A stretch of 64,000 nucleotides of DNA from Octopus sinensis (taxonomy: Eukaryota), in the NCBI RefSeq assembly GCF_006345805.1, contig NC_042998.1:154628001-154692000 (forward strand). Reading direction: 5' to 3'. The stretch's first letter is position 1. Each line of letters begins with the position of its first letter. The notes under the pieces were generated by a model that was given only the letters and a program-made list of their open reading frames with translations, was not told the DNA's origin and did not search any database. Position numbers and translations under genes: made by a program. This document shows positions 1,686 to 51,405 of the stretch, piece by piece.

Positions 1686-4280
1686 TATCAACAAACCAGT
1701 TCAAAGATGGCTTTTATTCAAACTTTATTTCTGCTCGCCATCATCATCATCATCATTTAGCGTCCGCTTTCCATGCTAGCATGGGTTGGATGGTTCAACT
1801 GGGGTCTGTGAAGCCAGAAGGCTGCATCAGGCCCAGTCTGATCTGGCAGTGTTTCTACGGCTGGATGCCCTTCCTAACGCCAACCACTCCGTGAGTGTAG
1901 TGGGTGCTTTTTACGTGCCACCCGCACAGGTGCCAGACGGAGCTGGCAAAGGGCCACGAACGGATGGTGCTTTTACGTGGCACCGGCACGGGGGCCAGGG
2001 GAGGCTGGCAACGGCCACGAATGGATGGTGCTACGTGCCACCGGCACAGGGGCCAGGCGAGGCTGGCAACGGACACGAACGGATGGTGCTTTTATGTGCC
2101 ACCGGCACGGAGGCCAGTCGGGGCGGCGCTGGCAACGGCCACGATCGGATGGTTCGCTTAACCACAGCTGCAATTTCCATTGATGTTGATCGACTTCGAT
2201 TTTGGTTCTGCTTTCTGATATCTGATTTGATTTGGTTTGATTTTGATTTTGATTTGATTTTGATTTTCACTTGTCTCAACGGATCTTCACAAGTGGAGTT
2301 TTGTGTCCCAAGAAGGAAAGGTATGTAGGCCACAGGTTATGTTCTCACTAGTCTTGCCAGGTCTTCTCACGCACAGCATAATTCCATAGGTCTCGGTCTC
2401 TAGTCATTTCCTTGGTGAGACCTAAAGTTCGAAGGTCGTGCTTCACTACCTCGTCCCATGTTTTCCTGGGTCTACCTCTTCCACAGGTTCCCTCAACTGT
2501 TAGAGTGTGGCACTTTCGCACACAACTATCTTCAGACATTCTCGTCACATGACCATACCAGCGCAAACTTCTCTCTTGCACACCACAACTGATGCTTCTT
2601 AGGTCCAACTTTTCTCTCAAAGTACTTACACTCTGTCGATTATGAGGAATATAGCATCAGTAGTACTTTTCCCTGGCACGAACCCAAACTGCATCTCATC
2701 TAAGCTAATTCTCTCTCTTATTAGTTGGGCTATAACCCTCTCCGTGATCTTCATTACCTGATCCAGCAGCTTGATACTCCTGTAGTTATTTGTATCTAGA
2801 GCGTCACCTTTACCTTTGTAGCAGTTGACTATTATGCTGCTACACCAGTCATTGGGTATGACTCCTTCGTGTATCACCTGGTTAACTATACGGGTGACTA
2901 GGCTATAGCCAACACTACCAGATATTTTGAGCATCTCTGCAGTGATTCCTGATGGGCCAGGGGCTTTCCCTGTTTTTATGCTTGTAATTGCCTTAACTAC
3001 TAAGGAACTGTCAACTCGGATTGCTGGTCCCTCTGTTGGGTCGACATTCGGCAGACTCTCTTTATCCCATTCATTTTCCTCATTCAGCAACCTTTCATAG
3101 TGGCGTCCCCAAACCTCTCTCTTTGCATCCTCATTTAGCGCAAGTGAGCCGTCATCCTTGCGAACACATTTCTCTCCTACCACGTCACGATTCTCTCTCA
3201 CACACTGTCTTGCAATATGAAATACCTCAAGTCTTTCATCCTCATGGCGCAGAACATTGGCAAAATTTTTCTTATCTGTTTCCCCTCTGGCTAAATACAC
3301 CTGCCTCCTAGCTTCCCTTCTGGCAGTCTTATACACATCCCTGCTACCACCGTTCTTCCAGTCCTTCCAAGCCTGTTTCTTTTGTCTAATAGCCCTGTCA
3401 ACAATATTGTTCCACCACCACGTTATTTTGGGTCTTGAGGGGACTTTGCACCAGCCACAGATCTGGTCAGTGGCTTTCAGCAGGTTGTCCCTTAGAAGCA
3501 TCCAGTTATCTTCTACCCCATGTGTAGTTATACCCCCTTCTATTTCATCGAAGGCTTCAAGTAACATGTCTCTAAATCTCTGTCCATTTGCAGGGTCTTT
3601 AAGCTTCCAGACCCTTCTTCTCCATGTTGGTCGTCCTCTTAGTCCTGATCCTAAAGTCACTAACTACCAGTCTATGTTGTGGGGTACATTCTTCGCCTGG
3701 GAAGGTTTTGGCATTTATAAGTAGCCATCTTTCCCTTTTTCTGGCAAGGATGTAGTCGATTTGGCTTGTATGCCGGCCCGATCGGTAGGTGACCAAGTGG
3801 CTTGTCGGTTTCCTGAAGTTAGTGTTGCCAACCATAAGACTATTCGCATCACAGAACTCCAGCAGCCTGGTTTCCTCCTCGTTGTGGGAACCATAACCGT
3901 AGTCTCCATGTACGCCATGGAAGCCCCCAGCATATTGTCAACATGCCCATTGAAGTCACCAGCCACAAAGAGAAGGTCCCTGTCATTCGTCAGTGAGGTG
4001 GTCTGCAGTAGGGTGTCATAGAAACGGTCTTTCTGTCCATCAGGTAGCCCTGGCTGAGGGGCATAGGCCGATATAATAGTTGCTAAACTATGATGGAGCC
4101 ATCTAATCCATTAATCATTAAGATGTGTTGTTTTATATTAAGTAAGGACAGTATCCATCTATCAATGTCATTTGACACTGCCATATTTTCGTACTCAATA
4201 CAAAATAAGATATCTATATTTTCATCTAATATTTGCTATTGTAGAAAGGAATTAATGATAGGATATTATAATTCATAACA
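1686..4280 (-). repeat. 3' LTR of the gypsy element, split into 1686-1740 and 4095-4280 by an RTE insertion
   Basis: The two pieces joined reproduce the 7997-8246 repeat. Begins TGTTATGAATT on the minus strand at 4280. Confidence 0.75.
1741..4094 (-). mobile_element. RTE-clade (BovB-like) LINE, 5'-truncated and internally deleted
   Basis: APE remnant (AGDFNGHV, SQIDYIL), then KAPGPSG, YKGKGDAL, NYRSIKLLDQVMK, QFGFVPGKSTTDAIF (2626-3660). C-terminal RWYGHV..GRGRPRKTW (2348-2620). 3' UTR with tandem repeats and a (GAT)n tail at 1741-1756. Confidence 0.92.
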
Positions 4281-12589: not shown

Positions 12590-13205
12590 TTGATGCATAT
12601 GATTCTAAGGAAGAAGACTTAGATTCCTGCAGTATAGATGACAAGAGGGAATTTCTGTGAGATAACCTGCTTAGGGCTACAGATCAGGTATGTGGATGGA
12701 GCAAAGTTCTAGCTGAACCAGAAGTAACAAAAGGTAGAGTGATAAGGTTGGTACAGTGATAAAAGGCTAAGAGATAGGCTTGGAAAAGAAAACGTTAACT
12801 TGGTGTCAGGCATACTTGACTAAAGGTGAGGTAGAAAAGAAGAGATTTGCACATATCCTGCAATGTGAGAGGTGTGGAAGTGTTCAGGATTGTGAGACAA
12901 TGTGTAAGAGAACTGAGATGTCATTGGTGAGAAATGGAGAGTACAGGATCACCACCCAAGAAAGTAAATCAAGCTACACAAGAGTCATACCCAGACCATT
13001 ATCATTGCAAAACTACTACAAAGACAAAGGGGATTCTTTGGAGAGAAGCAACTATAGAGAGCTCAAACTACTAGATTAGGTCATCAAGGTCACAGTCATA
13101 TAACAATTGATTCATGACAGAGTAGACCTAGATGTGATGCGGTTTGGCTTTGTCCTTGAAAGCAGCTCCAAGGATGCGATCTTCCTAGTGAGGCAGCTGT
13201 AGAAG
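12590..13205 (+). mobile_element. Highly degraded RTE-clade LINE remnant
   Basis: KGDSLERSNYRELKLLD*VIKV ... MRFGFVL..SSKDAIFLVRQL. Confidence 0.75.
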
Positions 13206-14415: not shown

Positions 14416-14784
14416 ATAACCACTAAATTCCTTTGTAAAACTTTAAGCTAAGGGAGGTAACCCTTGTTCAGCTGTCTGTAATGCTATGGCACTGAAACCT
14501 CTTGCACTCGCTTTACCTGCTAGAAATAGCAACCCAAATGCTTTGAAATCAGAATCTAATGCTGGATGTTCAAGAACCAAATAAAGAGTAGATTTTCAAT
14601 CCTGGGATCATCCTATGTCTATGTGGAGTAAATGTAGACTGAGATATATGGGTCCCAGAATGACAAACAGAATTTTGCCTTTATCAATATAGAAATATTT
14701 ACAAAAGTTCACGAATATTTGTAATATCTCATTTTAACGTTTAAAGTTATAAAATATTGATGTTAAAATTTAATTCATTTTCAG

Positions 14785-15004
14785 AATTAAAGCAAGTCTC
14801 ACTGTTGTACCCTTCAAAAATCTTGATTTTGGTGAAACATCTGCTTTGGAAAGTTTTTACAATGCTGATGTTGTGATTGTGGATATATCGACAGGAATAG
14901 TTCAAGCTCTTGGCTATCATGTTGGTGTCCGCCACAGTATGGGTATGAAACACAACATCATAATTTCTTGTGAGATAGATACTGAAGTAACACATCCATT
15001 CAAG
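14785..15004 (+). CDS. ASK1-type MAP3K (MAP3K5/MAP3K15-like), coding exon B (N-terminal regulatory region)
   Basis: ttttcag acceptor and GT donor at 15005; 220 nt, phase 2 to 0. Encodes IKASLTVVPFKNLDFGETSALESFYNADVVIVDISTGIVQALGYHVGVRHSMGMKHNII. The LDFGET..L..FYNADV and YH.GVR.S motifs are diagnostic of the ASK family. Confidence 0.93.
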
Positions 15005-15069
15005 GTATACATATTTTTGTCTTTTAAGAATAACGTTCATTTACTTTTGTAGTTTATGTTTTGATATTG

Positions 15070-15993: not shown

Positions 15994-17830
15994 CTAGCAG
16001 AGATACCCGGCATTGCCCGGTTACATTCAATAGAAGAATTAGACTTTTCTGTTATATATATATTTATATATATGGATACACACGCACACACACACAAATA
16101 TATGTATATTAATATAAATACATGAAAGTACATGAAGTTTGTTAAAAAAAAGGGGATCATGTATATACCTCCTGGCTGTTGAGATTATAACACCTCGTTG
16201 TAAACAATGTTCCTTGTTTTTCCTTGTGGAGCATATACAAAAAGGTTTCTTTTGGTTCCTACTCTTGAGCAGCCAACATACAGTTGCCTATGCGAGAAGC
16301 AGGGCTCTTCCAAGAGAAGACCAGGTACAGAGAGGGTTTGACCCTGAGATTTGTTAATGGACATGGCAAAGCTGACACGAATGGGGAATTGCAGTCTTCT
16401 GAATGTAAATGGAATTTCTGCTCCTGATGGAGTAAGAGGAAATCTTGGAATAAAGACGTCATCACCTTTTCCACATCCAAAAAGAATGATCGCCTCGATA
16501 ACGTGTAATATCATTTTCTTTATCACCAGTTGTGTTCCATTGCAAAGTCTTGGTGGTTCCAGATTGCGGAGTAGCATTACAGGAGTTCCAACTTTAAGTG
16601 GTAATATGTGTGGAGGTAGTCAAGGAGGGCTCCAGTGAATTGAGAAATTCAGGAGGATAGTTCACAACTTCAATTATATCTGGAATTGTATCAACAGACT
16701 TGTAAGTGTGTATAGTGCCGGGAAGAGAATGCATTAGCTGTTGATTAATTTTGTTAACAGCGACGTTTTTTGGAGCTAATATTGCTCTTTCACACAGCCA
16801 ATTGTGATTTTGGTAGTTTTGTGTGAAGTTGGGAAAGACTTTGTTTTTGAGGTCATCTACAGAATTAACAACAGAGGAAAATGACCACACTTCCATTTGT
16901 CCTGCAGCATCGAGAGGCATCTTGCCTTCACCAAGTGTGAAAATGTCCTGTGCAAACTTTGTGGACATTTTGTCGCCATGTAGCTGAGCTCTCATGTTAG
17001 TGGTGAGACTAAAGATTGTAACATGATGACACAGGGTAGAGGACTTAAGGCATGCTTGAACTTCATCAGCTCTAGTGCCTTTCGGAATGACAGGAAGAGT
17101 TTGCCCGAAATCACCTGACAACAGAAGCGTTACATCTCCCATTGGAGCCTGACAGTCTCGGATGTCTTTCAGGGCTCTATCTAATGCTTCCAAAGCTCCC
17201 TTGTGAGCCATAGTGCACTCATCCCAGACAATTACATAACACATTTTAAGTACTTGTCCCTGATCTGAGCTTTTGTTGATGTTGCATGAAGGCATTTCGG
17301 ATGCTGCTAAATTGAGAGGGAGTTTAAAAGTTGAGTGTGCTGTCCTGCCACCGAGTAACAAAGTAGCTGCAATGCCAGAGGTGGCTACAGCTACTGCAAT
17401 GTCCTGATGCTGCCTAACTTCTGCAAGGAGAAGCTGTGTAATAAATGTTTTTCCTGTCCCTCCAGGAGCATCGAGGAAGAAGATTCGTCCCTCGCGTTGG
17501 CGTACACTGTTAAGAATAGTTCTGTAGGCCTGCAGCTGGTCCGGAAGTAATTTAGGCTCATTTTCAACAATGTACTTTGAAAGCATTTGAGTGTCGTAGG
17601 TTGTTTCACGAATGACAGCAGTGGGAAGGCTATTTGACCCTGACCGGAATGCTTGTGGCAGGCCATACGTCGACAATTCATTTCCACCCAGTTTAGCAAT
17701 TCTATCTTCAACGTCAATGAGTGTTTTGTAATAGATTTCATTGCTGATACCCTCCATGTCAGGATAGAGCAGTTGAGCTTGGCGCTGAAGGGGACAATGT
17801 TTTTGAGATTCCGGTTCGAATGTAAGGCAG
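15994..17830 (-). mobile_element. Helitron, 5'-truncated (helicase domain plus intact 3' end)
   Basis: [104 protein letters not shown] in two frames. 3' subterminal GC hairpin (accgggcaatgccgggt, ~16006-16022) followed by the CTAG|T terminus at 15997-15993. Confidence 0.93.
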
Positions 17831-17934
17831 GTTTGAAAGTGTTCCCAACAGTTATTAGTTGTAGTGGTAGAGTGTTTATGCCGAATATGTACGTATGCAT
17901 GTATATATATGTATGTATGCCTGTATATATGTAC

Positions 17935-18068
17935 AAAATCCACTGAGAAGGCTTTTGTTGGTCTGAAGCTACAGCAGAAGACACATGTCAAGTCACCACA
18001 CAGTGGGACTGAACCCAGGACCATGTGTTTGGAATGTAGTTTGTTACCACACAGCCACACCTGCCCCT
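17935..18068 (-). mobile_element. tRNA-derived SINE head
   Basis: Minus strand ggcaggtgtggctgtgtggtaa (A-box-like) ... gggttcagtccc (B-box-like). Homologous to ~40960-41075. Confidence 0.75.
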
Positions 18069-20615: not shown

Positions 20616-20797
20616 TTATGCTGGGGCAATTCCTACAAATACTTGCCTTATACTCTTGATAACAATGGTGCTTGTGTAGTTGCTGATCCTGCAAGAGGGC
20701 AACAAATAGATACTCAAGTTGTGAACACAGGTGATGCTGCTCCTTTACTGTGCAATGCAATACAAAGTGTCTTGCTTGAGGTAGAAAAAGATAACAA
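20616..20797 (+). CDS. ASK1-type MAP3K, coding exon C
   Basis: tatag acceptor and gtaagt donor at 20798; 182 nt, phase 0 to 2, in frame with exon B. Encodes LCWGNSYKYLPYTLDNNGACVVADP...PLLCNAIQSVLLEVEKDN, matching the ASK1 'GNYTFVPY...PLVDRFIQLL' segment. Confidence 0.85.
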
Positions 20798-20994
20798 GTA
20801 AGTGTCAATTTGTAATATTGTCATTCTTACATCTTGTAAAGCTTTCTTTTCATTTATCTTTTTGTTTTGAATATGTAATTATCCAATTTTTCTTTGATTT
20901 ATTTATATATCTTTTATTTTTATCAGCAATGTATCAGCATAGTCACATATTTAATGACTGGCACTACAACATTACAGTTAACTATTACACTGGT

Positions 20995-21330
20995 ATAGTA
21001 GATGCCTTTGGTAGAAGTAAATACAGAGGCATGAAATTGTTAGACCAGGTCATGAAAGTTATGGAGAGAGTTATGGCCCAATAATTTAGGAACAAAATTT
21101 GACAAGATGAGATACAGTTTGGTCTTGTGCCAGAAAGAAATACTATTGACACCTACTTTCTAATAAGTACAATGTAGAAATATTTTGATAAAAGAATACC
21201 ATTGTACTTGGTATTCGTTTAGGTAGCGAAAGCCTTCAACAAGGTCCAGTGCTCTGATCTGGTGGCTGCTGAGGAAGCTGGGGTAGAGGAATGACTTGTT
21301 GAATAGGTGTTGCTATGAAGGTAAGAGTTA
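20995..21330 (+). mobile_element. Degraded RTE RT fragment
   Basis: KYRGMKLLDQVMKVMERVMAQ ... IQFGLVPER. Confidence 0.75.
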
Positions 21331-22318
21331 GGTACAAGTCATTTCAGTATGAAATTAGTCCAATAAAACTTATCTACAGGAAGTCAATTGATGAAAAGTT
21401 GTTTAATGGAGAATTGTTCATTAAAAAGTTGTTTGATAAAAAGCCATACCATGGAAGGCAGAATACACTCAATCCCTAAAAACCTATACTTTATCACTAT
21501 CCAAGAATTATAAAACTACCAGTTACAAATCAACTAAATACAATGCATTAAGTATATGCTTACCAAGAAAACAGCTGGGAAAATACATTTATCAGGAGTA
21601 GAGTATGATAGTTAGTATTAACTCTACAATTCACAAACTGATTTGAGAACTTGTCCAAAATCACAGTAAGAAAAAGGGAAATTAAAACAAACATAAAAGT
21701 AGATAAAAATCTAGAAATCACAGTTTTGAGCCAAAAAATGTAGGTTCATCTAGGATTTTGGACAGCAGATGTTGAAATTGCATCATGAAACATCTACTCC
21801 GACTCCTTATAGATTTCTCAAGTTTTTTGGCAACACAGAGAGAGAGAGAGAGATGATAAGAAATGGAGCGATAATTACCAATGAGAAGTGGATCATTGGT
21901 GTTTTAAAGTCATTGTTTAATTTAATTTCGAGATTGTTTATACCTGTTTCTGTTTATTAAAATGGGGTAAATTTACATTTACTTCGTTACATTTAAGAAG
22001 CATCTTCAGAACGATTATGTGGAAAAGAAAGACAAAGAAAAGGAAAAAAAGAAAAGGGAAAGGAGAAAGGAGTTCATTAAAGCAATAATCTTACATTTTA
22101 GTGACTTGTATATTTCCATGTGTCAGTAGATTCCTTCATTCGAAAACATCAAATTAGGGTTAGGTACAAGGCCTTCGAGGATTCTCCAGATGAATATATG
22201 TTTATATAAATACATATATATATATATATATATATATGGGTGTGTGTGATTGTGTATAGAAGAATATATTAATAAAAATATATATATACAAGAAAAAAGC
22301 AACAAAAATGGATCAGTA

Positions 22319-22408
22319 TTTCGGTACAATTGTTTCGTACGAAGACCACCTTTATTAAGGCTGCAAATATTGCAGCAAATACACGTGACCCGTACTCATC
22401 AGCCGAAA
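22319..22408 (-). ncRNA. Mirror copy of the type I hammerhead ribozyme motif
   Basis: Exact reverse complement of 22674-22763 within the left arm of the foldback. Confidence 0.83.
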
Positions 22409-22673
22409 AAACATCTGAGTTCTCAAAACATCCAAGGGGGTGAGGCTACACTCATGAAACATCAGGGATAGTTCTATAAAAATCAGATTTAGATAATAAA
22501 TGGACTTCCAAAGTTCTTTAATGTTGCACAGTTTAAAGCCTGTTATTTGACTGTGCAACATTAAAGAACTTTGGAAGTCCGTTTATTATCTAAATCTGAT
22601 TTTTATAGTACTATCCCTGATGTTTCATGAGTGTAGCCTCACCCCCTTGGATGTTTTGAGAACTCAGATGTTT

Positions 22674-22763
22674 TTTCGGCTGATGAGTACGGGTCACGTG
22701 TATTTGCTGCAATATTTGCAGCCTTAATAAAGGTGGTCTTCGTACGAAACAATTGTACCGAAA
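22674..22763 (+). ncRNA. Type I hammerhead ribozyme motif (Penelope-type, palindromic stem III)
   Basis: tttcgg-CTGATGA-gtacg[49-nt loop with inner gctgcaa/ttgcagc hairpin]cgtac-GAAA-caattg-TA-ccgaaa. 6-bp stem I, intact core, 5-bp stem II, self-complementary acaattgt stem III, GUA cleavage triplet at 22755-22757. Confidence 0.85.
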
Positions 22764-22866
22764 TATTGATCCATTTTTGTTGCTTTTTTCTTGTTTATAA
22801 TCACCCCACATTATCTTATGGTTAATACCATATAGATTTCTGGTACATTTAAGTTAAGTACCTCAT

Positions 22867-24834
22867 TCATGTGAATTCAACAGAACTCACTTGAATCTTA
22901 ATTGCTTTTACTGTATATATATATGATTGATTGATTGATTGATTGATTGATTCTAGTTTCAGCTTATGAGCTGTGGCCATGCTGGGGCACCGCCATTTGG
23001 TGTTGCTACTTGGTTTCACTTCATGGAGGGGCTTTCTAGCAACTGCTATTTGGTGCATGAGAGAGTTCGATGCAGCTGCCCTCATCTGCCCCTCCTGTCG
23101 TGAAGTTGGTTCATCTGGGACACCTGACAGGAAGAGATCCAGCTTCATTTTAAAGACATCTGTATCCACCCCATGCAGGTCTCTCAGGTTCTTCGGGAGG
23201 ATATTGAAGAGCTGTGGGCCTCGGAAGCCCAGGCTATCACAGAATCTTGTCCTACATCTTGATGGCAGGTTTGGAGTCCTAGGCACCACACAGTGGCGCC
23301 CAGTTCTGGCATTTGCGTAACTCTTGATGCCAAAGTTCAGGACACTTCCCTCCAGGATCTTCCAGATGTATATTATGGCATATCTTTCCCGCCTACGCTC
23401 CAGGGAATATAATTTTAATCTCTTGAGTTTTTCCCAGTAGCTTACATTCTGCATAGAGGCTATCTTCTTCGTGTAGCTTCGTTGGATCGCCTCAAGTTCT
23501 GTGATCAACTTGACACTGGATGGTGACCATAGCTGAGAGCAATAGTCAAAGTGGCTTAGGACAAGTGTCTTCCAGAGGACCATCATGGTTTCTTGTTCTC
23601 TTGTTCTAAAGGTTCTAAGAATCCATCCAGCCAGCCGTCTACATTTCATTGTCAGTTTAGCAACATGTACATGAAAGGTCACGTCATCACTCATGTGAAT
23701 ACCCAGGTCACGCACTGATTGTGCCTCTGGGATTGCAATCCCTCCGGATCCAGTGTATTCATTGGGTATTGCATTCAGTTTTGCATGCTGATAGTATAAA
23801 GCTTGAAACTTTCCAGCATTGAACTGCATGCTATTCTTTTCAGCCCACTTGTATATTTCGTCCAGCTCACATTGCAGGTGTTTAGTGTCCTCAGGGTTCT
23901 GTATTGCCTGTGAAACTTTTGTATCATCTGCATAACTTGTGATCGTGGCTCTCTGCGTGGCTGAGGGCATGTCTGAGAGGGCCATTATGAACAGTAGTGG
24001 TCCCAGAACAGTGCCTTGCGGAACACCGCTCACTATTTGTGTGTTAATGGAGGTGGCCCCATTGGCTACTACCACCTGACTTCTATCCTTCAGAAAGTCA
24101 TGAAGCCATTCTCCCAGTTTTCCAACTATGTTGAGATCACGCAGTTTGTGACATATCATTCCATGATCGACTTTATCAAAGGCCTTTGCAAAGTCGAGAT
24201 ATATCACTTCCATATTTGAGTGGTTGAGCAGCCGTTTCAGCACCCAGTTATAGTGTTGTAGGAGCTGAGTTAAACAGCTTCTCCCTGGTTGGAAACCATG
24301 TTGGGTGTCGGGCAGCAAGTCATTCTCTTCAAGGAAGGTGATCAGCTTCCTTCTGACTATTCGTTCCATGACCTTGCTGATGTGTGAGGTCAGAGAGATA
24401 GGTCTATAGTTCTTGGCTTCCGCTCTGCTACCTCCTTTATGAATGGGGCATATTTTACCTTCCTTCAGTTTTCCTGGAAGTTTGCCAGCTGCAAGGAAGC
24501 TCTGAAAGAGGAACTGCAGTGGTCTTGCTAGGACTCTCTTACATGCTTTTAGGAGGATTGCCGGGAATCCATCAGGGCCAGTAGCTGAGTCTGTTTTCAT
24601 TTCATCTATAGCCTTGGTTACATCGTCTTCCTTTATATCGATGTAATCTATCGTCGCCGCCTCTGATTTTATATCTGCAGTGGTAAAAAAGTCAGTTGGA
24701 TTGGTGATTTGGAGATGCCCAAGGGGTGGAGTGAAAACACTCTTGAATTGCTCATTCAGTATTTCACTTACCCTCATTGGTTTTCCTGTAAGTGTGCCAT
24801 CCTTTTCGAGGAGTGGCCCTATTCTACAGTGCAC
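22867..24834 (-). CDS. LINE ORF2 reverse transcriptase domain (655-aa uninterrupted frame)
   Basis: All non-LTR RT motifs are present. The frame runs through the 3' tail, probably because a small indel near ~23030 removed the natural stop: the 28765-28893 copy has TGA there. Confidence 0.9.
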   Translation of the reverse strand: MHCRIGPLLEKDGTLTGKPMRVSEILNEQFKSVFTPPLGHLQITNPTDFFTTADIKSEAATIDYIDIKEDDVTKAIDEMKTDSATGPDGFPAILLKACKRVLARPLQFLFQSFLAAGKLPGKLKEGKICPIHKGGSRAEAKNYRPISLTSHISKVMERIVRRKLITFLEENDLLPDTQHGFQPGRSCLTQLLQHYNWVLKRLLNHSNMEVIYLDFAKAFDKVDHGMICHKLRDLNIVGKLGEWLHDFLKDRSQVVVANGATSINTQIVSGVPQGTVLGPLLFIMALSDMPSATQRATITSYADDTKVSQAIQNPEDTKHLQCELDEIYKWAEKNSMQFNAGKFQALYYQHAKLNAIPNEYTGSGGIAIPEAQSVRDLGIHMSDDVTFHVHVAKLTMKCRRLAGWILRTFRTREQETMMVLWKTLVLSHFDYCSQLWSPSSVKLITELEAIQRSYTKKIASMQNVSYWEKLKRLKLYSLERRRERYAIIYIWKILEGSVLNFGIKSYANARTGRHCVVPRTPNLPSRCRTRFCDSLGFRGPQLFNILPKNLRDLHGVDTDVFKMKLDLFLSGVPDEPTSRQEGQMRAAASNSLMHQIAVARKPLHEVKPSSNTKWRCPSMATAHKLKLESINQSINQSYIYTVKAIKIQVSSVEFT

Positions 24835-24880
24835 TGTAGCTGTTTCTTTGGCATACCTGTAGAAGCTCTGGGGTTAGATT

Positions 24881-26016
24881 TTATGTTTCTATAGCCCAGG
24901 CTTCTTTGTCTGCTCCTTCTTTTTCATGGGAGAGTTGCAGACATTTTTCGATTTCCAACAGTTTTATTTTTAGGCGGGACTTTTCACTGCTTTCAATCTG
25001 TTTGTTTAGGCGATTTGAAAATTTCGTACGCCGTCTCATTAAAATTTCCTCTCTCTGGGGATTTTGTTCTTGTGTACAGTGGCCTTTCTCTCTGGGACAC
25101 ATTTGTAGCATATGGCTTGCATTACAGACATGAATTGTTGAAGTTTCACGTCGATGTCTGGCGAGGAGAGACATTTAGGCCAGTTTTGTTTGAGGATCTC
25201 TTTCTCAATTTGTTTCCAGTTTGCCTTATGGTAGTTCAAGCTGGAAAGATTTTGAGGGTTTCTTGTAGGCTGCATGTCCGTGCTCTCTTTTGGCCCGTAC
25301 ATGGTCAGCTCTATCATGTTGTGATCCGAGAGTAGTGTCGGTGTCACTTTCACATTATGGATGAGATCCATGTCATTTGTGAAGCAGAGATCCAGTGTGT
25401 TACCTGCCCTGGTTGGTTGGAGTATTACCTGCTCCATGTACAGGGTGTTGATGAGGTTCAGGAGGGACCTCGCCTGTCCTCGTTCACATCTTGTCATTCC
25501 TGGGAGAGAAAGGCCCTCGGGCCATCTGACATTGGGCAGATTGAAGTCTCCCATAAGAAGCACACCTATGTGTTGTTCTAATGTGGTTAGAATTTCTTCT
25601 ATTTTTTAAAGGCAGTCTTCAAACTTGCCCACATGGCTTGGGGCATCTGGAGGGCGATATGTAGCACACACAACTACATCAAGTTGCCTAATATGTACAA
25701 TTAGTGTGTCACACACCGAGTTTGAGTATGACAAGAGGACCTGGGGTGTGAGGTCCTCACGGATGTACATAGCAACACCTCCATGACTCCTTTCTTTCCT
25801 GTCAGTCCGTAGTACAGCATACTGTGGTATGTGTAACTCCGCATCTGCTATGTCCGGTTTCAGGTGCGTTTCTGTAAGTGCTATGCATAAGGCTTGATTG
25901 CATGCAACAAAGTCTCTCAGGAACGGGATCTTTGTCCTGTTACTGAGTGTTTGCAGTCCTCTGATGTTCAGTAGGAGCATCGAGGTGAGGTGTACGTTGT
26001 TGCCGGCGGTGTCCAT
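24881..26016 (-). pseudogene. LINE ORF2 apurinic-like endonuclease and linker, broken into several frames
   Basis: Pieces 26016-25606, 25563-25039 and 25174-24881 carry APE motifs. Confidence 0.88.
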
Positions 26017-26092
26017 CCTGTGTCTGTTTGCTGTGGTGGTCTGGTATATAGTGGGTAGTCCCACCTGCGGGCTTGGGTTTGATGAAGCCAGG

Positions 26093-26872
26093 TCAGCTGC
26101 TGTACAATCTTTGTGCCATGCACAAAAAAGATTGTTGCTCAGCAGCTGCTCTTTCGACAACATCATGTTGGCGGTTTGTGGCGCGCACAACATCTGCGTA
26201 CCTCCGCTTTGGGGCAGGTGGTGCGTGGTCCATCCCTTTTCTTTGTGTTGATGGTTTGTCCATCTGCCTCGTGTCTCTGTGGCAGGGTCCCGATGTGCAA
26301 AGCGGCAGCCTGCACCTTCCTTTCCATGCCAGCAGGAACCTCTCAGGTAGAACATACACACCCGTGTGCGCTGTTTGGTTCCATCCTTTGCGGTTCCACT
26401 TCTATTCCTGGTTGTTTCACCTTTGGTCCTGCTTGAGCTTTTTCTTTTCCTTTAGCTCTTCCAGTCCTTCTTTTAGTTCTTCTTCCTCCCTCTACCTCTT
26501 CACCGGGTTCCCGTCTCCATGGCCCTTGCTGCCGGTTGGAGAACTTGCACCTGGGTTCACTTCCCGGGCAGGTTTCTCATTCAAAACCTCCCCGGACGTC
26601 CACCAGGTGGGGGTGACTTCTTTCATCGTCTCCATTCTTGCCATCTTTGCCCCGCTCGTTCTCAAAGATGGCATCAAGTGCGCCAATGTGCGACCGTACA
26701 GCGCATATGAGCGCACGAATTCCTGTCTCTTTTGCTCCATCTGAACCGCTGTCCTCTTGTAGCCTCTGCTCTTCAGCGCAGCCGCAATCACCTCGCTAGG
26801 GCTATCTCCGCCGGCGCACTCCCATGCTTGTACGAATAAATCCAGCTCGTCAGGTCTCCATGCTCTGGACAT
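26093..26872 (-). pseudogene. LINE ORF1: Myb/SANT-like domain, charged linker, C-x7-C-x8-C-x3-H zinc finger
   Basis: MSRAWRPDELDLFVQAW...IAAALKSRGYKRTAVQMEQKRQEFVRSY. In-frame TAG at 26494-26492, then a frameshift in an A-run. CMFYLRGSCWHGKEGAGCRFAH at 26358-26293. The probable C-terminus (PKRRYADVVR...SFLCMAQRLYSS*) lies in the 26093 frame. Confidence 0.75.
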
Positions 26873-26924: not shown

Positions 26925-28050
26925 AGGAAGATATTAAGGCTAATTAGAAGATAGAGTACTTGAAAAAGAAATATTAACAATATTAAAGTTTGCGGGTAAA
27001 AACGTTATTTAATCTTAAGGCTAATTAGGGGATAGAGTATCTGAAAATGTATTAGCAATATTAATATTATATTAGAGTGTGGGTAAAAACGTTGTTTAAT
27101 CTTAAGGCTAATTAGGAGATAGAGTATCTGAAAATATATTAGCAATATTAATATTATATTAGAGTGTGGGTAATATTAAACGTTATTTAATTTAATCTTA
27201 AGGCTAATTAGAAGACAGAGTATCTGAAAAATTATTAACAATATTAAGCAATATTAACCGTTATTTAATTTAATCTTAAGGCTAATTAGACGTTATTAAT
27301 ATTAAACGTTATTTAATTTAATCTTAAGGCTAATTAGAAGATAGAGTATCTGAAAATATATTAGCAATGTTAATATTATATTAGAGTGTGGGTAATATTA
27401 AACGTTATTTAATTTAATCTTAAGGCTAATTAACAATAATTATTAACAATATTAAACAATATTAAACGTTATTTAATTTAATCCTAAGGCTAATTTGACG
27501 GTATCAATATTAAACGTTATTTAATTTAATCTTAAGGCTAATTAGAAGATAGAGTATCTGAAAAATTATTATATCGAGAACAGATATTGAAAATGTAAAC
27601 AAACAAAGATTATATTAGAGTGTGGGTAATATTAAGCGTTATTTAATTTAATCTTAAGGCTAATTAGAAGATAGAGTATCTGAAAAATTATTAACAATAT
27701 TAAACAATATTAAACGTTATTTAATTTAATCTTAAGGCTAATTAACAATAATTATTAACAATATTAAACAATATTAAACGTTATTTAATTTAATCTTAAG
27801 GCTAATTAGACGTTATCAATATTAAACGTTATTTAATTTAATCTTAAGGCTAATTAGAAGATAGAGTATCTGAGAAATTATTATATCGAGAACAGATATT
27901 GAAAATGTAAACAAACAAAGATTAAAAATTATATTAGAGTGTGGGTAATATTAAACGTTATTTAATTTAATCTTAAGGCTAATTAGAAGATAGAGTATCT
28001 GGAAAATTATTATATCGAGAACAGACATTGAAAATGTAAACAAACAAAGT
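26925..28050. repeat. AT-rich tandem array of ~50-120-bp modular units
   Basis: About 14 copies of the core aaacgttatttaatttaatcttaaggctaatta, combined with modules gaagatagagtatctgaaaa, ttatattagagtgtgggtaatatt and cgagaacagatattgaaaatgtaaacaaacaaag. Confidence 0.92.
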
Positions 28051-28622: not shown

Positions 28623-28764
28623 TAACGATTAAATAATTAAATTTAGAAAAATTAGAAGAAAAGTTTTTTTAAAGGAATATTTGTATAGTTTTCAAATATA
28701 AGTGGCATTCTGCCTTTCTCTGACTCCCTTGTTTGCACTTGTGTGTTCGAGGTCGAACACACAT

Positions 28765-28893
28765 CGAACTCTCTCATGCACCAAATGGCAGTCGCTAAAA
28801 AGCTTTCGTGAAGTAAAACTGTGTAGCAACACCAAGTGGCGGTGCCCCAGCATGGCCACAGCTCAATGAGCTGAAACTAAAATCAATCAATCA
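28765..28893 (+). mobile_element. 3'-end fragment of the same CR1-clade LINE family
   Basis: tcgaactctctcatgcaccaaat...ggcggtgccccagcatggccacagctc..gagctgaaacta(aatc)n matches the reverse complement of 22924-23065. Confidence 0.88.
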
Positions 28894-28894
28894 T

Positions 28895-29099
28895 ATGTAT
28901 ATATATATATATATATATAATAACATATACATATATCTATATATATATATATATATATGGATATATATATATATATAATTTATGTATATATATATATAAT
29001 ATATATTTATGTATATATATATATATATTATGTATATATATATATTTATATTTATATTATGTATATATATATTTATGTATATATATATATATTTATGTA

Positions 29100-29132
<33 letters not shown>

Positions 29133-29462
29133 TTATGTATATATATATACGTATATATGTAATATATTTTATAGATATATATATATATATCTATATATTT
29201 ATTGTATATAGATATCTATATATATATTATAGTATATATATCTATTTATGTATATGTATATTTTATTTTATATATTATGTATATATATATATATATCTAT
29301 ATTTTGTATAGGTATATATATATATATATGGTATATATAGAGATATATATGTATAGATATATATAGTCTAATATATATACATATATATAATATATATATA
29401 GATATGTTATAATATATATATATATTTATATATTAGTATGTATATATATATATATATATTTA

Positions 29463-29498
<36 letters not shown>

Positions 29499-29687
29499 TA
29501 TGTATATATATATATATATATATATATTTATGTATATATATATATATATTACATATATATATATATATTTATGTATATATATAATATATATTACATATAT
29601 ATTATATATATTATGTATATATATATATATTATGTATATATATATATGTATATACGTATCTATATATATATATAGTATATACGTATC

Positions 29688-29720
<33 letters not shown>

Positions 29721-29745
29721 TATATACATATATATATATATAGGC
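28895..29745. repeat. Degenerate (TA)n microsatellite block
   Basis: About 850 bp of interrupted TA repeats. Confidence 0.97.
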
Positions 29746-29959: not shown

Positions 29960-32290
29960 ATTGCTATTCGTTGGATAGGGTATATTTTAGCATGTTGGGA
30001 AGTTTACCACATGCAAGGAAACGCTGAAAGAGTATCAGCCGAGGGTCTGCAAGGGCCTTTTTATGTCTTTAAGAGAACAGCTGTGTGTCCATCTGGGCTT
30101 GTTGCTGAGTTTGATCTCATTTCATCAATGTCCAATATTACATCCTTCTGTTATGTTGATTTAATAAATGGTTGCCTCTTTTCCAAATAGATTCATTATA
30201 TTGAAAAGCTCCCTCGACTTGTTTATTTGCATATTTTCCAGTGGAGAAGTGAAAACACTTCAAAATTGTTTATTTAGTGCTTCACTTATCTTCCCCAGAT
30301 CTGCAGTTAGCGAGCCATTTTTACCAAATAGTGGCCCAATCTGATAGTGTTCTGAGGCAGACTCCTTTGCTGTCTAGAGGGCTTTAAGATTTCTTTTTAT
30401 ATTCTCGACTGCCCAGATTTCTCTTTCTTCTCTATGGAAGATTTTGAGTTTATTTTCTATCTCAAAGAGTTCCTCTGTTAGGTGGGATTTCACACTGTCA
30501 TTAAGGTGTTTGTTTAAATGATTTGAGAACTTTATTCTCTGCCACATGAGTATTCTCCTGTCTTGGGGAATGATGTTTTTGTGTCTATTGGTTCCCTTCC
30601 CTGGGACATATTTAATGCTTGCATTATTGATATGAATATATTGAGTTTCATATCTATGTCTTGCATAGAGAGGCTTTTACGCCAGTCCTGCTGGAGTATC
30701 TGTTTTTCAAATGACTTTCAGTCAGCCTTATAGAAATTTAGGCTGGATAGGGTTTGAGTGCCATCTGTGTGGAGTTTAGTTAATTCCAGGCCATACATTG
30801 TCAGTTCTATCATGTTATGGTCTGTGAATATTGTCGGTGATATATTTATGTTGTGGATAATTTCTACATTGTTTGTAAAACAGAGGTCCAGGATATTTAT
30901 GTGCCTGGTTGGAGAGAGTATGATCTGCTCCATGAATAACATTTTTGTAAGATCAAGTAGAGATTCTGCTTGATTTTCGTCTTTGTGCATCATTCTTGGG
31001 GTTATATTGCCATCAGTCCACCTGATGTTGGGTAAGTTGAAGTCACCCATCAGGAATATAATAGTACATTGATCCAATTGTGTTAGTGCTTACTTTATTG
31101 CACTGAGGCTTTCCTCAAATTTTCCATCATGATTTGAGCCATCAGGTGGGTGACACAGTATGTGAATATCACTATATGAAATTGTTTTAGATGTACTATG
31201 AGTGTGTCAAAAACTGAGTTTGAGTTTGATAACAGGGTTAATGGTGTAACATCTTTGCGGATATACATTGGAACTCCACCGTAACTTCTTTTTTTTTCTG
31301 TCAGTACGGAAGGTAGCATACATACATTGGTATGTGTATCTCCACATCACTTATGTCTGCAGATGTGTTTCTGTAAATGCAATGCCTATAGCTTGATTAC
31401 ATGCAGAAAGATTCTTCAGGTGCTGAATTTTGCATTTGCTGTTGTTAAGCAGTATGCCACTTATATTCATCAGTAGAAATGGCATTGGTGTTGGTATGTT
31501 GGGTGGTTTGGTGGCAGTGGTGGCCAACCAGGGTCCATCAATTATGGCGGTCTTGTGTGCAAGGGTGCATAGCTCAGCTTTGTTTGTAGCCACGACAACT
31601 GTTGCACTATTTCCTGTGCCACGCTTAAAAAAGTTCTGGCCTTCTTTTCTGCAGGTTTGTGCTGGAATATAGATTTTTCTAAGTGTGGTTGTTTCCTTCG
31701 TTGGGTGAGTGATGGCTTTTGATTCAGCATTGGGTGCACAAAGCAGCAGTTGGTCCCACTTTCTCCATGCCAGCAGAAACCTTTTTTGTGGAACTTGTAG
31801 ATAGACCTTTTTCTTTGAGAGGGTGTGGTTTGGGTTTTTATTTTAGAACCATTTTCACTTGGCTTTCGTCTGCTGTCTTCTTTTTCTAATTCTACATTGC
31901 TGCTTTGGGAGGTGTTGGGACTGTGGTTGTTTGCACTTTTCTCATTTCCTTCCTTGTTGAGCTTTTTAACTTTGGCATTGATGTTGTCACTGCTTTCTGT
32001 GTGCGGTTTCTCACAGGCAGTGTCATCATTATTTTGCCACTTTCGAAAATGATGTCCAGTTTTTCTAGGTGTGGCTGTATGAGCACATAAGATCAGATGA
32101 ACTCATTCTTCTTCTGCTCTATTTGTGCCACTGATCTGGAGAAACAATTGCTCTTCAGGTCAGCTGTAATTAAATTATTTGGCGAATCAGTTTCTGCAAT
32201 TTCCCTGGCACATAGGAACAATCCTATTTCTGTAGACTTCCAATTTCTTATCTTCCTTGTGGTGTATGGTTGTGGTGGTGCGTGCAGTTA
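29960..32290 (-). mobile_element. CR1-clade LINE (copy 2), older and lacking most of RT and the 3' end
   Basis: Myb-like RNWKSTEIGLFLCAREIAETDSPNNLITADLKSNCFSRSVAQIEQKKNEFI*SYVL (32248-32081). Finger YKFHKKGFCWHGESGTNCCFVH (31799-31734). APE (LMNISG, AFTETHL, MGDFNLP, NILDLCF, TDH) and RT start (DEMRSNSATSPDG) are all homologous to copy 1. Confidence 0.9.
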
Positions 32291-36971: not shown

Positions 36972-37127
36972 GGTCGCTCTTGTCCTGGACTGTATAAGCC
37001 TAAATTGGTGCTAGATGCTGCAAATGGTGTTGGTGCTGCTAAAGTAGAATTATTAAAGCGTCATTTAAATGATGCTTTGGACATAGAGCTGAGAAATGAT
37101 GGCAGTGATGGCATATTAAATTATCAA
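36972..37127 (+). CDS. PGM3: Phosphoacetylglucosamine mutase, internal exon
   Basis: cag/gtaag; 156 nt, phase 0 to 0. KLVLDAANGVGAAK...LRNDGSDGILNYQ. Confidence 0.95.
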
Positions 37128-38597: not shown

Positions 38598-39881
38598 GTA
38601 TGTGTGTGTATTGACATAGCAATGAACAAAACTAGTGTGATGAACAAGAATACCCTGTGACATTTAGTTGCCTTTCACTTCTTAACAAGCTCAATAAAAT
38701 ACACGAAGTACTGAAGTTGACATAATCATCTAAAACTCTTGAAAGTGGTATTCCAGCTTGGCTATTGTCCAGGCACTGAAGTCAGTAAAATAAGACAAAT
38801 TAGTAATGACAGTGTCATCATCATCATCATTTAACGTCCACTTTCTATGCTGGCATGGATTGGATGGTTTGACAGGAGCCAGGTAGATGACTAAACCAGG
38901 CTACTGTGTCTGTTTTAGCATGGGTTTTATGGTTGGATGCCTTTCCTAACATCAACCACCCTGCAAAGTGAACTAGGTGCTTTTTATCTGGTACCAGCCC
39001 AGGTGAATTCAGTTTTGGCATGAGTTTTACAGATGGATGCCAACCAGTTCACAGTGTGAACTGGATGCTTTTTACATGGCACCAGCACTGGCAGTCACCA
39101 AGTAACTTGTAAGACAAAGAATTTTGAGAGAGCAAGAGCTTTGGAGGAGGTGATCTTGTGTCAGATGATGAAATATTAGAGTGTAGCAGATGATAGATGG
39201 TTTTATGTTTCATTTAAAATTAATTTTAACGTCAGCTTGTTGTAACCTAAGAAATTAATAAAACATGCTGATTTTATGAGTTATACTGAACAACTTAGTG
39301 TTACAAATTTAACCAAATCACTAATAATATAACATATGCACCAGAGAAGTTCTATTTCTTCTACCAACTTGAGATTCTTCTTCTTTTCTCACACATATGA
39401 TAAGCTTATAGAGAATCCAAGATAGAATGAAAGTTGTCAATAATTGCATATCAGCTAAGTTTACCTTAATTTAACTACTTTTCATTTAATATTTTGATAT
39501 TTTTATTACTAGTTTCATACATTTATAAACCCTGTTTTGATCTATCTAATGAAACTCATTATTTAAACTATTTTTCCGTTAACAGTGTGGTGCTGATTAT
39601 GTCAAGACTCAGCAGAAATTTCCTATAGGTATATATTATTTTAAAAAATTATTTTATGTTTTATTAGGTTGAGTCAATATAGTATTCATTGATTGCTCTG
39701 ACTGTCAATCATGTATGTGTGTGTATTGACATAGCAATGAACAAAACTAGTGTGGTGAACAAGAATACCCTGTGACATTTAGTTGCCTTTCACTTCTTAA
39801 CAAGCTCAATAAAATACACGAAGTACTGAAGTTGACATAATCATCTAAAACTCTTGAAAGTGGTATTCCAGCTTGGCTATT
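38598..39881. repeat. 169-bp direct repeat pair (38598-38766 and 39713-39881)
   Basis: Identical apart from one visible mismatch; flanks the 43-nt PGM3 exon. Confidence 0.9.
39586..39628 (+). CDS. PGM3: Phosphoacetylglucosamine mutase, 43-nt internal exon
   Basis: aacag/gtat; phase 0 to 1. CGADYVKTQQKFPI (PGM3 CGADFVK motif). Confidence 0.93.
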
Positions 39882-51158: not shown

Positions 51159-51159
51159 T

Positions 51160-51180
51160 ATTAATATATGTATATATATG

Positions 51181-51211
<31 letters not shown>

Positions 51212-51299: not shown

Positions 51300-51333
<34 letters not shown>

Positions 51334-51365: not shown

Positions 51366-51405
<40 letters not shown>

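What the first reader, a model, noticed from the sequence alone, without database searches (positions are those of the whole stretch)
22674..22763. Intact Penelope-type hammerhead ribozyme with an unusually long, structured stem II, in the sense orientation of the MAP3K transcript
Seen: complete core (CUGAUGA, GAAA, GUA), 6-bp stem I, 5-bp stem II closing a 49-nt loop with its own 7-bp hairpin, and a palindromic ACAAUUGU stem III too short to fold as a monomer. Established: Penelope-like elements carry type I hammerheads with palindromic stem III that can cleave as dimers. Inference: a potentially active self-cleaving RNA 1.9 kb downstream of MAP3K exon C, able to cut the pre-mRNA co-transcriptionally.
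Basis: partly seen in the sequence, partly recalled or inferred. Interest (0 to 1): 0.72.

Follow-up and report, generated by a model that had tools for sequence, protein, structure and literature searches.

The report
Mirrored hammerhead motifs in retroelement foldback
The hammerhead ribozyme motif is real, but it is one of two mirror-image copies inside a 517-bp foldback that looks like a truncated Penelope-type retroelement insertion, and in a read-through host transcript (either strand) it should be locked in a long RNA hairpin, so it is probably an ordinary transposon relic and not a ribozyme that cuts the gene's RNA.

Summary
The motif at 22674-22763 (+) is as described: 6-bp helix I, CUGAUGA, GAAA, palindromic ACAAUUGU helix III, and a GUA cut site after 22757. 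A relaxed hammerhead descriptor expects 0.017 chance hits per shuffled window. Rfam Hammerhead_1 aligns end to end but below threshold (22.6 vs 34 bits), because 53 nt are treated as an insertion in helix II.

The motif lies in the right arm of a 250-nt inverted repeat (22283-22532 / 22550-22799, 4 mismatches, 17-nt spacer). An identical hammerhead therefore sits on the minus strand at 22408-22319. The "49-nt loop" is really a 23-bp rod (z = -4.4).

Two 5'-truncated copies lying head to head, hammerheads 36 nt from the outer ends, an AT-rich target and no ORF all match published Penelope-like element (PLE) insertion structures.

In a transcript of either strand the arms form a -446 kcal/mol hairpin, and forcing the ribozyme fold costs about 130 kcal/mol. 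No same-sense partner lies in cis for dimer cleavage. Whether the site is inside a MAP3K intron is plausible but not shown.

No parent element or other copy could be found with the collections available.

Verdict: a new member of a known kind, of low interest.

The parts
22283..22799 (.). Whole foldback element: two 250-nt arms in head-to-head inverted orientation around a 17-nt spacer.
   Evidence: the repeat finder pair I1 is 98% complementary. There are 4 mismatches in 250 nt. No other copy exists in the window.
22283..22532 (-). Left arm: a copy of the retroelement unit read on the minus strand, 5'-truncated end at the centre and 3' end at 22283-22289.
22533..22549 (.). 17-nt non-palindromic spacer TTAAAGCCTGTTATTTG between the arms.
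22550..22799 (+). Right arm: a copy of the unit read on the plus strand, 5'-truncated end at the centre and 3' end at about 22794-22799.
22674..22763 (+). Type I hammerhead motif, plus-strand copy. Predicted scissile bond between 22757 and 22758.
   Evidence: Direct reading. Rfam RF00163 at 22.6 bits over model positions 1-45. Descriptor against shuffles.
22674..22679 (+). Helix I, 5' strand UUUCGG. It pairs with 22758-22763 (CCGAAA).
22680..22686 (+). Core box C3-A9, CUGAUGA.
22687..22745 (+). Helix II domain, 59 nt: a 5-bp base GUACG/CGUAC with G10.1-C11.1, continuing as an imperfect 23-bp rod capped by the hairpin GCUGCAA-UAU-UUGCAGC.
   Evidence: strand folding gives -20.3 kcal/mol, z=-4.36.
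22746..22757 (+). Core G12 A13 A14 plus helix III. A15.1-CAAUUG-U16.1 is the palindrome ACAAUUGU (2 bp and a tetraloop as a monomer, 8 bp as a dimer), followed by A17.
   Evidence: The homodimer cofold gives a double hammerhead with an 8-bp helix III at -59.8 kcal/mol.
22758..22763 (+). Helix I, 3' strand CCGAAA. This would be the first nucleotides of the 3' cleavage product.
22764..22799 (+). U-rich 3' tail of the unit, 36 nt between the hammerhead and the outer end of the insertion.
   Evidence: The layout compares with PLE reverse-transcription start sites and the 'tail' in PMC11167929 and PMC8557442.
22319..22408 (-). Mirror hammerhead motif, identical in sequence. CUGAUGA is at 22402-22396, helix II at 22395-22337, GAAA at 22336-22333, and the predicted cut is after 22325.
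22199..22282 (.). AT-rich, (TA)n/(TG)n microsatellite flank on the left side: the probable target-site context.

Best explanation
The locus is a dead-on-arrival insertion of a hammerhead-bearing Penelope-like retroelement, or of a non-autonomous derivative of one.

Structure: two copies of the same roughly 250-nt 3'-terminal segment lie head to head, with their 3' ends pointing outwards. Each copy carries an intact type I hammerhead 36 nt from its outer end.

Proposed origin (inferred): the element's endonuclease/RT nicked both strands of an AT-rich target. Each nick primed reverse transcription from the same internal site near the 3' end of the element RNA. The two short cDNAs were then joined at the centre. 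Alternatively, one short cDNA snapped back and primed its own complement, which would explain the identical inner end-points and the 17-nt loop.

The hammerhead is a passenger of the element. In its native tandem context it is thought to process element RNA as a dimer, with protein help.

At this locus it has no such context. Whichever strand is transcribed, the antisense arm emerges first and the sense arm zips onto it as it is made. The result is a hairpin of about 250 bp of double-stranded RNA that buries the ribozyme. The expected host-level consequence, if any, is a long dsRNA or palindrome (siRNA, editing, DNA instability), not self-cleavage.

Shown here: the motif, the mirror copy, the arm identity, the energetics, and the absence of an ORF or other copies in the window. 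Inferred: the PLE parentage, the insertion mechanism and the lack of activity.
For: Motif and mirror copy:
- Complete hammerhead on both strands.
- 250-nt arms with 4 mismatches and a 17-nt spacer.

Agreement with published PLE hammerheads and insertions:
- The hammerhead features match those published for PLE and metazoan type I hammerheads: G10.1-C11.1, a palindromic minimal helix III and a large helix II.
- Cervera & de la Pena reported 'dual min-HHRs ~100-700 bp apart on opposite strands' and attributed the widespread single motifs to truncated PLEs. Here the two CUGAUGA boxes are 278 bp apart.
- Craig et al. describe heavy 5' truncation, an adjacent inverted 5'-truncated copy, hammerheads near the 3' ends, a 30-40 bp tail, and a (TA)n target bias that hides target-site duplications.
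- Frangieh et al. showed that a PLE protein nicks AND extends both strands of AT-rich DNA, starting RT at the same internal site a short distance 3' of the hammerhead.
- The left flank here is (TA)n/AT-rich.

Not part of a neighbour:
- No tRNA-like part.
- The foldback is not part of the neighbouring LINE, whose 3' end is at about 22914-22950.

Energetics:
- Hairpin -445.8 kcal/mol; the hammerhead-forced fold is about 130 kcal/mol worse.
- Unit alone, about 1e-4 hammerhead-competent.

Published activity and frequency:
- PLE hammerheads have low activity, act as dimers, depend on protein in the PLE studied, and left no in vivo ends there.
- Intronic copies of PLE-derived hammerhead elements are common, about 43% of Xenopus retrozyme copies.
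Against: - No RT or GIY-YIG ORF, and no other copy of the unit, exists in the 64-kb window.
- No relative was found in the metagenome, genome or viral contig scans or in the protein universe. PLE parentage therefore rests on architecture and on the literature, not on homology.
- A 59-nt helix II is far larger than the 6-8 bp described for PLE hammerheads.
- No clear target-site duplication is visible.
- Two independent priming events do not by themselves explain why both arms stop at the same inner position.
- The activity statements come from thermodynamic predictions, not from an assay.
Confidence: 0.68

Rival explanations
1. One reading: a functional, self-cleaving intronic hammerhead that cuts the MAP3K (ASK-type) pre-mRNA co-transcriptionally, as a monomer or as an intermolecular dimer.
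For: The core and helices are intact. The isolated 90-mer's hammerhead-compatible fold lies only 1 kcal/mol above its MFE. A homodimer is predicted to form a double hammerhead. The motif is on the same strand as the verified ASK exon, and the 20616-20798 ORF has strong splice signals. Conserved intronic hammerheads exist in amniotes (cited in PMC7229834).
Against: The antisense copy lies 265 nt upstream in the same transcript, giving a 250-bp hairpin and a penalty of about 130 kcal/mol for the ribozyme fold. No same-sense partner lies in cis. No tertiary loop contacts are present. PLE-type hammerheads cleave poorly even as dimers. There is no evidence of conservation, since the two copies are identical by recent duplication. 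The intronic position is unverified.
Confidence: 0.04
2. A hammerhead-bearing non-autonomous element that is not directly a truncated PLE (a non-LTR retrozyme monomer or a SINE-like element). The inverted duplication would have arisen later by a replication or repair template switch, not during retrotransposition.
For: There is no ORF and the unit is short. Animal retrozymes have units of 51-972 bp and many monomeric copies. Identical inner end-points with a short spacer are what a snap-back or template switch produces.
Against: Retrozymes are defined by tandem direct repeats, and none is present here. They typically carry canonical hammerheads with loop 1-loop 2 contacts, which are absent here. 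There is no tRNA-like or pol III part. Retrozymes are themselves proposed to derive from PLE pLTRs, so this rival differs mainly in the timing of the inversion.
Confidence: 0.2
3. A foldback DNA transposon (MITE), or a host long-hairpin RNA locus (siRNA/miRNA source), in which the hammerhead-like motif is incidental.
For: The element is an almost perfect 517-bp palindrome in an AT-rich setting. Rfam miRNA-precursor models give sub-threshold hits to the hairpin.
Against: A complete hammerhead is expected by chance only 0.017 times per window. The miRNA hits are all below their gathering scores and merely reflect a long helix. No clean TA duplication or second copy is present.
Confidence: 0.06
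4. A chance motif or an assembly artefact (an artificial palindrome).
For: Palindromic artefacts do occur in long-read assemblies. The Rfam score is below threshold.
Against: The shuffle expectation is 0.017. The helix II rod has z=-4.36. The arms differ at 4 positions and have different unique flanks on each side, inside a 64-kb contig.
Confidence: 0.02

Closest known systems
Hammerhead ribozymes of Penelope-like elements (Cervera & de la Pena 2014, PMC4209133; Lunse, Weinberg & Breaker 2016/17, cited in PMC6765202)
   Same: Type I topology; complete core; G10.1-C11.1; a minimal palindromic helix III implying dimeric action; a helix II larger than canonical; no loop-loop tertiary contacts; occurrence as paired motifs a few hundred bp apart on opposite strands, or as solo motifs from truncated elements.
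   Different: Helix II is a 59-nt, 23-bp rod instead of 6-8 bp. [quoted passage not shown] Helix I is a full 6 bp. No PLE ORF is nearby.
PLE insertion architecture: 5'-truncated copy plus adjacent inverted 5'-truncated copy, 30-40 bp tail, AT-rich/(TA)n targets (Craig et al. 2021, PMC8557442; Frangieh et al. 2024, PMC11167929)
   Same: Head-to-head inverted copies with 3' ends outwards; hammerhead a few tens of nt from the 3' end; AT-rich/(TA)n flank; no discernible target-site duplication.
   Different: Both copies are truncated to only 250 nt, at the same position. No full-length body or pLTR-ORF junction is present.
Animal non-LTR retrozymes (Cervera & de la Pena 2020, PMC7229834; bioRxiv 10.64898/2026.07.22.740005)
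   Same: A short non-coding unit with a type I hammerhead; related to PLE pLTRs; often intronic.
   Different: Retrozymes are tandem direct repeats with canonical hammerheads that have loop 1-loop 2 contacts, and they yield circRNAs. Here the copies are inverted and the hammerhead is of the minimal type.
Rfam RF00163 Hammerhead_1
   Same: Aligns end to end (model 1-45) to 22674-22763, with all core positions matching.
   Different: Scores 22.6 bits against the gathering score of 34, because of the 53-nt insertion in helix II and the weak helix III. Standard annotation pipelines would miss it.
Conserved intronic hammerheads of amniotes (HH9/HH10; de la Pena & Garcia-Robles 2010, cited in PMC7229834)
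   Same: A hammerhead possibly lying within an intron, in sense orientation.
   Different: Those are single-copy, ultraconserved, stable monomeric ribozymes. This one is a young transposon copy masked by its own antisense duplicate.

Membership tests
Hammerhead ribozyme, type I | Conserved core C3 U4 G5 A6 N7 G8 A9 / G12 A13 A14 / A15.1-U16.1 / H17, with helices I, II and III in type I order | tested here: met
   Direct reading; the descriptor hits only these two sites; the Rfam alignment covers all 45 model positions.
Hammerhead ribozyme, type I | Score at or above Rfam RF00163 gathering threshold (34 bits) | tested here: not met
   22.6 bits, E=0.0014 in a 131-nt search. No hit in the whole-window gathering search or the 1.2-kb E<=10 search. 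The shortfall is explained by the 53-nt insertion in helix II.
Hammerhead ribozyme, type I | Mg2+-dependent self-cleavage 3' of H17 | not testable with these tools
   Only thermodynamic predictions are available.
Hammerhead ribozyme, type I | Helices supported by covariation among family members | not testable with these tools
   Only two copies are available, and they are identical over the 90 nt. No relatives were found.
PLE-type hammerhead (Cervera & de la Pena 2014 criteria) | Palindromic positions 15.2-16.2 / loop 3 with a minimal helix III | tested here: met
   ACAAUUGU; criterion taken.
PLE-type hammerhead (Cervera & de la Pena 2014 criteria) | Conserved G10.1-C11.1 pair | tested here: met
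   CUGAUGA-G...C-GAAA.
PLE-type hammerhead (Cervera & de la Pena 2014 criteria) | [quoted passage not shown] | tested here: not met
   A9 is followed directly by the paired G10.1.
PLE-type hammerhead (Cervera & de la Pena 2014 criteria) | Larger-than-canonical helix II | tested here: met
   A 23-bp rod of 59 nt, well beyond the 6-8 bp described.
PLE-type hammerhead (Cervera & de la Pena 2014 criteria) | Location in the pseudo-LTR of an element encoding RT + GIY-YIG endonuclease | tested here: not met
   No such ORF is in the window. The only RT next door is a LINE (RVT_1 + Exo_endo_phos_2) whose 3' end is separate from the foldback. Parent copies elsewhere in the genome could not be searched.
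PLE insertion architecture | 5'-truncated copy with an adjacent inverted 5'-truncated copy (head to head) | tested here: met
   Arms 22283-22532(-) and 22550-22799(+), with the hammerheads nearer the outer ends; criterion taken.
PLE insertion architecture | AT-rich / (TA)n target, target-site duplication often indiscernible | tested here: met
   The left flank is (TA)n/AT-rich and no clear duplication is seen; criteria taken.
PLE insertion architecture | 30-40 bp 'tail' extension at one end | tested here: inconclusive
   36 nt follow the hammerhead in both arms. Without other copies, a tail cannot be told apart from the body.
Animal non-LTR retrozyme | Tandem direct repeats of the hammerhead-bearing unit | tested here: not met
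   The copies are inverted, and there is no direct repeat of the unit.
Foldback DNA transposon / MITE | Fixed termini flanked by a defined target-site duplication; multiple copies | tested here: inconclusive
   No clean duplication and no second copy in 64 kb. The genome-wide copy number is unknown.

The most novel reading that the evidence does not exclude
The unit may belong to a Penelope-like lineage whose hammerhead carries a 59-nt helix II and therefore escapes both the RNAmotif descriptors and the Rfam threshold. If so, PLE clades now described as lacking canonical hammerheads could in fact carry complete, long-helix-II ribozymes. One candidate is the Naiads, which target (TA)n and have 'HHR_half_core' elements whose two core halves lie 35-50 nt apart. 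A weaker variant of this reading is that the antisense arm works as a built-in mask, making the ribozyme conditional on hairpin unwinding or processing.
Probability: 0.08. Interest if true: 0.5.

Novelty: new member of a known kind. Interest (0 to 1): 0.2.

Why it matters
As it stands, this is one more transposon-borne hammerhead in an animal genome. Such motifs occur in the thousands per genome, and about four in ten copies of related elements lie in introns in the one genus examined.

Three modest points are useful:
- Standard annotation (Rfam gathering threshold) misses the motif entirely because of the long helix II, so censuses of PLE hammerheads probably undercount such variants.
- The locus is a clean natural example of the head-to-head product expected if a PLE enzyme primes reverse transcription on both strands, as shown in vitro in 2024.
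- A ribozyme motif must be judged in its transcript context. Here its own inverted duplicate should silence it and instead create a long dsRNA/palindrome, which is the feature more likely to matter to the host.

Tried and rejected
- Rfam at gathering threshold over the whole window gave 0 hits. Rfam at E<=10 over 1.2 kb gave only sub-threshold miRNA-precursor hits caused by the long hairpin, which I rejected as generic helix matches.
- blastn of the unit against the window found no other copy.
- Pattern scans for the hammerhead (CTGATGAGTACG N30-60 CGTACGAAAC) gave one hit in metagenome contigs and one in prokaryotic genome contigs. Both lack helices I and III and lie in GC-rich bacterial sequence. 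The same pattern and a helix II pattern gave none in viral contigs.
- Six-frame peptides of the unit against 5.8 billion predicted proteins, meant to catch spurious ORFs over other copies, found none.
- Exact look-up of the neighbouring LINE ORF to identify the source found nothing on record. Look-ups of the two ASK-exon relatives gave only anonymous short contigs. The source organism remains unidentified, beyond being an animal genome rich in transposons and (TA)n repeats.
- A literature search for the exact hammerhead strings found 0 papers. Lunse et al. (PMC5785218) is not held. The supplements of the two key PLE papers are not held.
They are not evidence of the same weight as database hits.
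- Variant-core (U3-A8) and very lax descriptors gave three more hits that look like chance and were not pursued.
- A tRNA-derived SINE origin was rejected because no tRNA-like sequence is present.
- Origin as part of the adjacent LINE was rejected because the shared LINE 3' end stops at about 22914.

Full report
**1. The observation**

The plus strand at 22674-22763 reads tttcgg-CTGATGA-gtacg-[49 nt]-cgtac-GAAA-CAATTG-T-A|ccgaaa.
- a 6-bp helix I (22674-22679 with 22758-22763);
- the CUGAUGA box (22680-22686);
- a 5-bp base of helix II with the canonical G10.1-C11.1 pair;
- GAAA (22746-22749);
- the self-complementary ACAAUUGU, which gives only 2 bp plus a tetraloop in a monomer;
- a GUA triplet that places the scissile bond after 22757.

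A deliberately relaxed descriptor finds this site and one other in both strands of the window. The settings were helix I >=5 bp, helix II >=4 bp, GU pairs allowed, helix II insert up to 70 nt and helix III 0-12 nt. Dinucleotide shuffles give 0.017 hits per window, and 5 of 300 shuffles had any hit. Variant-core and laxer scans add nothing credible.

Rfam's Hammerhead_1 model aligns to exactly these 90 nt over all 45 model positions. The score is only 22.6 bits against a gathering score of 34, because 53 nt are treated as an insertion in helix II. Accordingly the motif is invisible in the whole-window gathering search and in a 1.2-kb E<=10 search.

The "49-nt loop" is not a loop. The 59-nt helix II domain folds into a 23-bp imperfect rod of -20.3 kcal/mol, z=-4.36.

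**2.

The motif lies in the right arm of a 250-nt inverted repeat. The arms are 22283-22532 and 22550-22799, 98% complementary, with a 17-nt spacer. They differ at 4 positions, none of them within the hammerhead.

An identical hammerhead therefore lies on the minus strand at 22408-22319, with its cut after 22325. Each arm, read from the centre outwards, consists of 124 nt, then the 90-nt hammerhead, then a 36-nt U-rich tail. The two copies are thus head to head with their 3' ends pointing outwards.

Other facts about the unit:
- It has no other copy in the window.
- It has no tRNA-like part.
- It has no coding capacity.

The left flank is a (TA)n/(TG)n, AT-rich tract, and no clean target-site duplication is visible.

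The adjacent retroelement on the minus strand is a LINE (Exo_endo_phos_2 + RVT_1). Its 3' end, shared with another fragment at 28762-28919, stops at the (GATT)n/(TA)n tract at about 22914-22950, which is 115 bp from the foldback. The foldback is a separate insertion.

**3. What it most likely is**

The combination matches published descriptions of Penelope-like elements (PLEs).
- Metazoan PLE hammerheads are type I. They have a minimal palindromic helix III, a conserved G10.1-C11.1 and an enlarged helix II. Most occur as solo motifs, attributed to truncated elements, and pairs "~100-700 bp apart but in opposite strands" were also seen (PMC4209133). Here the two CUGAUGA boxes are 278 bp apart.
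- PLE insertions are heavily 5'-truncated and often carry an inverted 5'-truncated copy immediately adjacent. Their hammerhead lies near the 3' end, and they can have a 30-40-bp tail. In several clades they prefer (TA)n, which hides target duplications (PMC8557442).
- A purified PLE protein nicks and extends both strands of AT-rich DNA. It starts reverse transcription at the same internal RNA site a short distance 3' of the hammerhead (PMC11167929). That activity predicts exactly this kind of head-to-head product.

I therefore read the locus as a dead-on-arrival PLE (or PLE-derived non-autonomous) insertion. It is young, since the arms differ by only 1.6%.

The identical inner end-points and the 17-nt spacer suggest that a snap-back or template switch made the second arm. 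Two independent truncations look less likely. That step is inference.

Weak points of this reading:
- No RT/GIY-YIG ORF or second copy is available in the window.
- No relatives were recovered from any accessible collection.
- The nucleotide usually found between positions 9 and 10.1 is missing.
- Helix II is far longer than described for PLE hammerheads.

**4. How it would behave**

In isolation, the 90-mer's hammerhead-compatible fold (-24.5 kcal/mol) is close to the MFE (-25.5 kcal/mol). It makes up about 3% of the ensemble. Within the single 250-267-nt unit the competent fraction drops to about 1e-4, because the 3' part prefers another hairpin.

In a transcript spanning the whole element, on either strand, the antisense arm is made first. 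The complete 517-nt RNA is then a near-perfect hairpin of -445.8 kcal/mol, and forcing the hammerhead fold costs about 130 kcal/mol.

The helix is already nucleated at the loop when the ribozyme segment emerges. Zippering should therefore outrun any local folding. This is an inference from general RNA folding kinetics.

The dimer route that such hammerheads use needs two same-sense copies. A homodimer is indeed predicted to form a double hammerhead with an 8-bp helix III. At this locus, however, the only partner in cis is antisense.

Published PLE hammerheads cleave poorly even as dimers. The one PLE hammerhead studied with its protein was protein-assisted, dispensable for insertion, and left no RNA-seq ends at its cut site.

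The likely host-level consequence, if the region is transcribed, is a long dsRNA hairpin (siRNA or editing substrate) and a long DNA palindrome. Self-cleavage is not the likely outcome.

**5. Gene context**

- One ASK-type MAP3K exon is verified on the plus strand at 14784-15005. It hits DRHyd-ASK at 3.3e-13 and the start of MAP3K_TRAF_bd, and has relatives at up to 58% identity.
It has no Pfam hit and no homologue. It shows only weak similarity (p about 0.05) to the corresponding part of human ASK1 as I recalled it.
- I found no further ASK exons in the window, using a recalled human ASK1 or Pfam on + strand ORF pieces from 26.8 to 37.2 kb.
- From 37 kb onwards the + strand carries PGM3-like exons.

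"In sense within a MAP3K intron" is therefore plausible but not shown. Even if true it would be unremarkable, because about 43% of Xenopus retrozyme copies are intronic.

**6. Comparison, novelty and verdict**

The closest known things are PLE hammerheads and PLE inverted insertions. Animal retrozymes and amniote intronic hammerheads resemble the locus less, for lack of tandem repeats and for lack of conservation and monomer stability respectively.

Membership in "hammerhead type I" is met on sequence and structure but not on the Rfam threshold. Membership in "PLE hammerhead" is met on three of four motif criteria and on architecture, but the defining link to an RT + GIY-YIG element could not be tested.

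The long helix II is a variant worth noting, because it defeats standard detection. The most novel reading left open is that such long-helix-II hammerheads exist in PLE clades thought to lack them. Some Naiad elements, for example, have the two core halves 35-50 nt apart. I give this about 8%.

Overall this is a real motif, an ordinary kind of object, and probably inactive at this site.

Noticed in passing
window 22867-26872 (-), 3' end about 22914-22950: A nearly full-length non-LTR retrotransposon (LINE). It has an ORF2 with Exo_endo_phos_2 and RVT_1 domains, a possible ORF1 at 26492-26872, and a 3' end in a (GATT)n/(TA)n microsatellite. The long ORF reads through the microsatellite, so its annotated stop is not the true protein end.
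   Followed up: partly
window 29998-31405 (-) and 28762-28919 (+): A second, diverged copy of the same LINE family (65% identity over 1.4 kb). There is also an 85%-identical 3'-end fragment in the opposite orientation, abutting the 850-bp (AT)n array.
   Followed up: partly
window 16185-18060 (-): A PIF1-like helicase ORF (PF05970, 2.6e-58) split over two ORFs, which looks like a Helitron-type transposon remnant.
   Followed up: partly
window 37002-37124, 39586-39633, 43423-43497 (+): Exons of a phosphoacetylglucosamine mutase (PGM3/AGM1)-like gene on the same strand as the ASK exon. They were recognised with a human sequence recalled from memory. They raise the question of where the MAP3K transcription unit ends.
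   Followed up: partly
window 28893-29742, 51151-51620, 58413-58955: Three very long, imperfect (TA)n arrays of 0.5-0.85 kb. The window is unusually rich in TA and CA microsatellites, which are the preferred targets reported for some PLE clades.
   Followed up: no
window 26931-28012: A tandem array with a unit of about 87 nt. TRF reports 2.8 clean copies at 26994-27247, and blastn shows diverged copies out to about 28012. It lies directly upstream of the LINE.
   Followed up: no
window about 55400-58350: A GC-richer block of repeated units whose translations recur in several frames and on both strands (for example '...RYRARYRKNEPKL...', '...ATVPDIERTN...'). It looks like a satellite or a tandemly repeated element.
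   Followed up: no
window 45886-46520 and 62715-63320: Two stretches 16.8 kb apart share near-identical translated ORFs (for example LIQQLQLLQHQDTSKHVRDYSIHNTTAFQEYNSSLKSLPKHHNQ). This may be a dispersed or segmental repeat within the AT-rich 44-64 kb part of the window.
   Followed up: no
window about 43890-43990: A run of N (an assembly gap) shows up as X residues in the translation, just downstream of the third PGM3-like exon.
   Followed up: no
window 2626-3660 (-), 12771-13076 (+), 20785-21081 (+): Fragments of another LINE reverse-transcriptase family, sharing the motif '...YKGKGD..NYR.IKLLDQVMK..ERV.AQ'.
   Followed up: no
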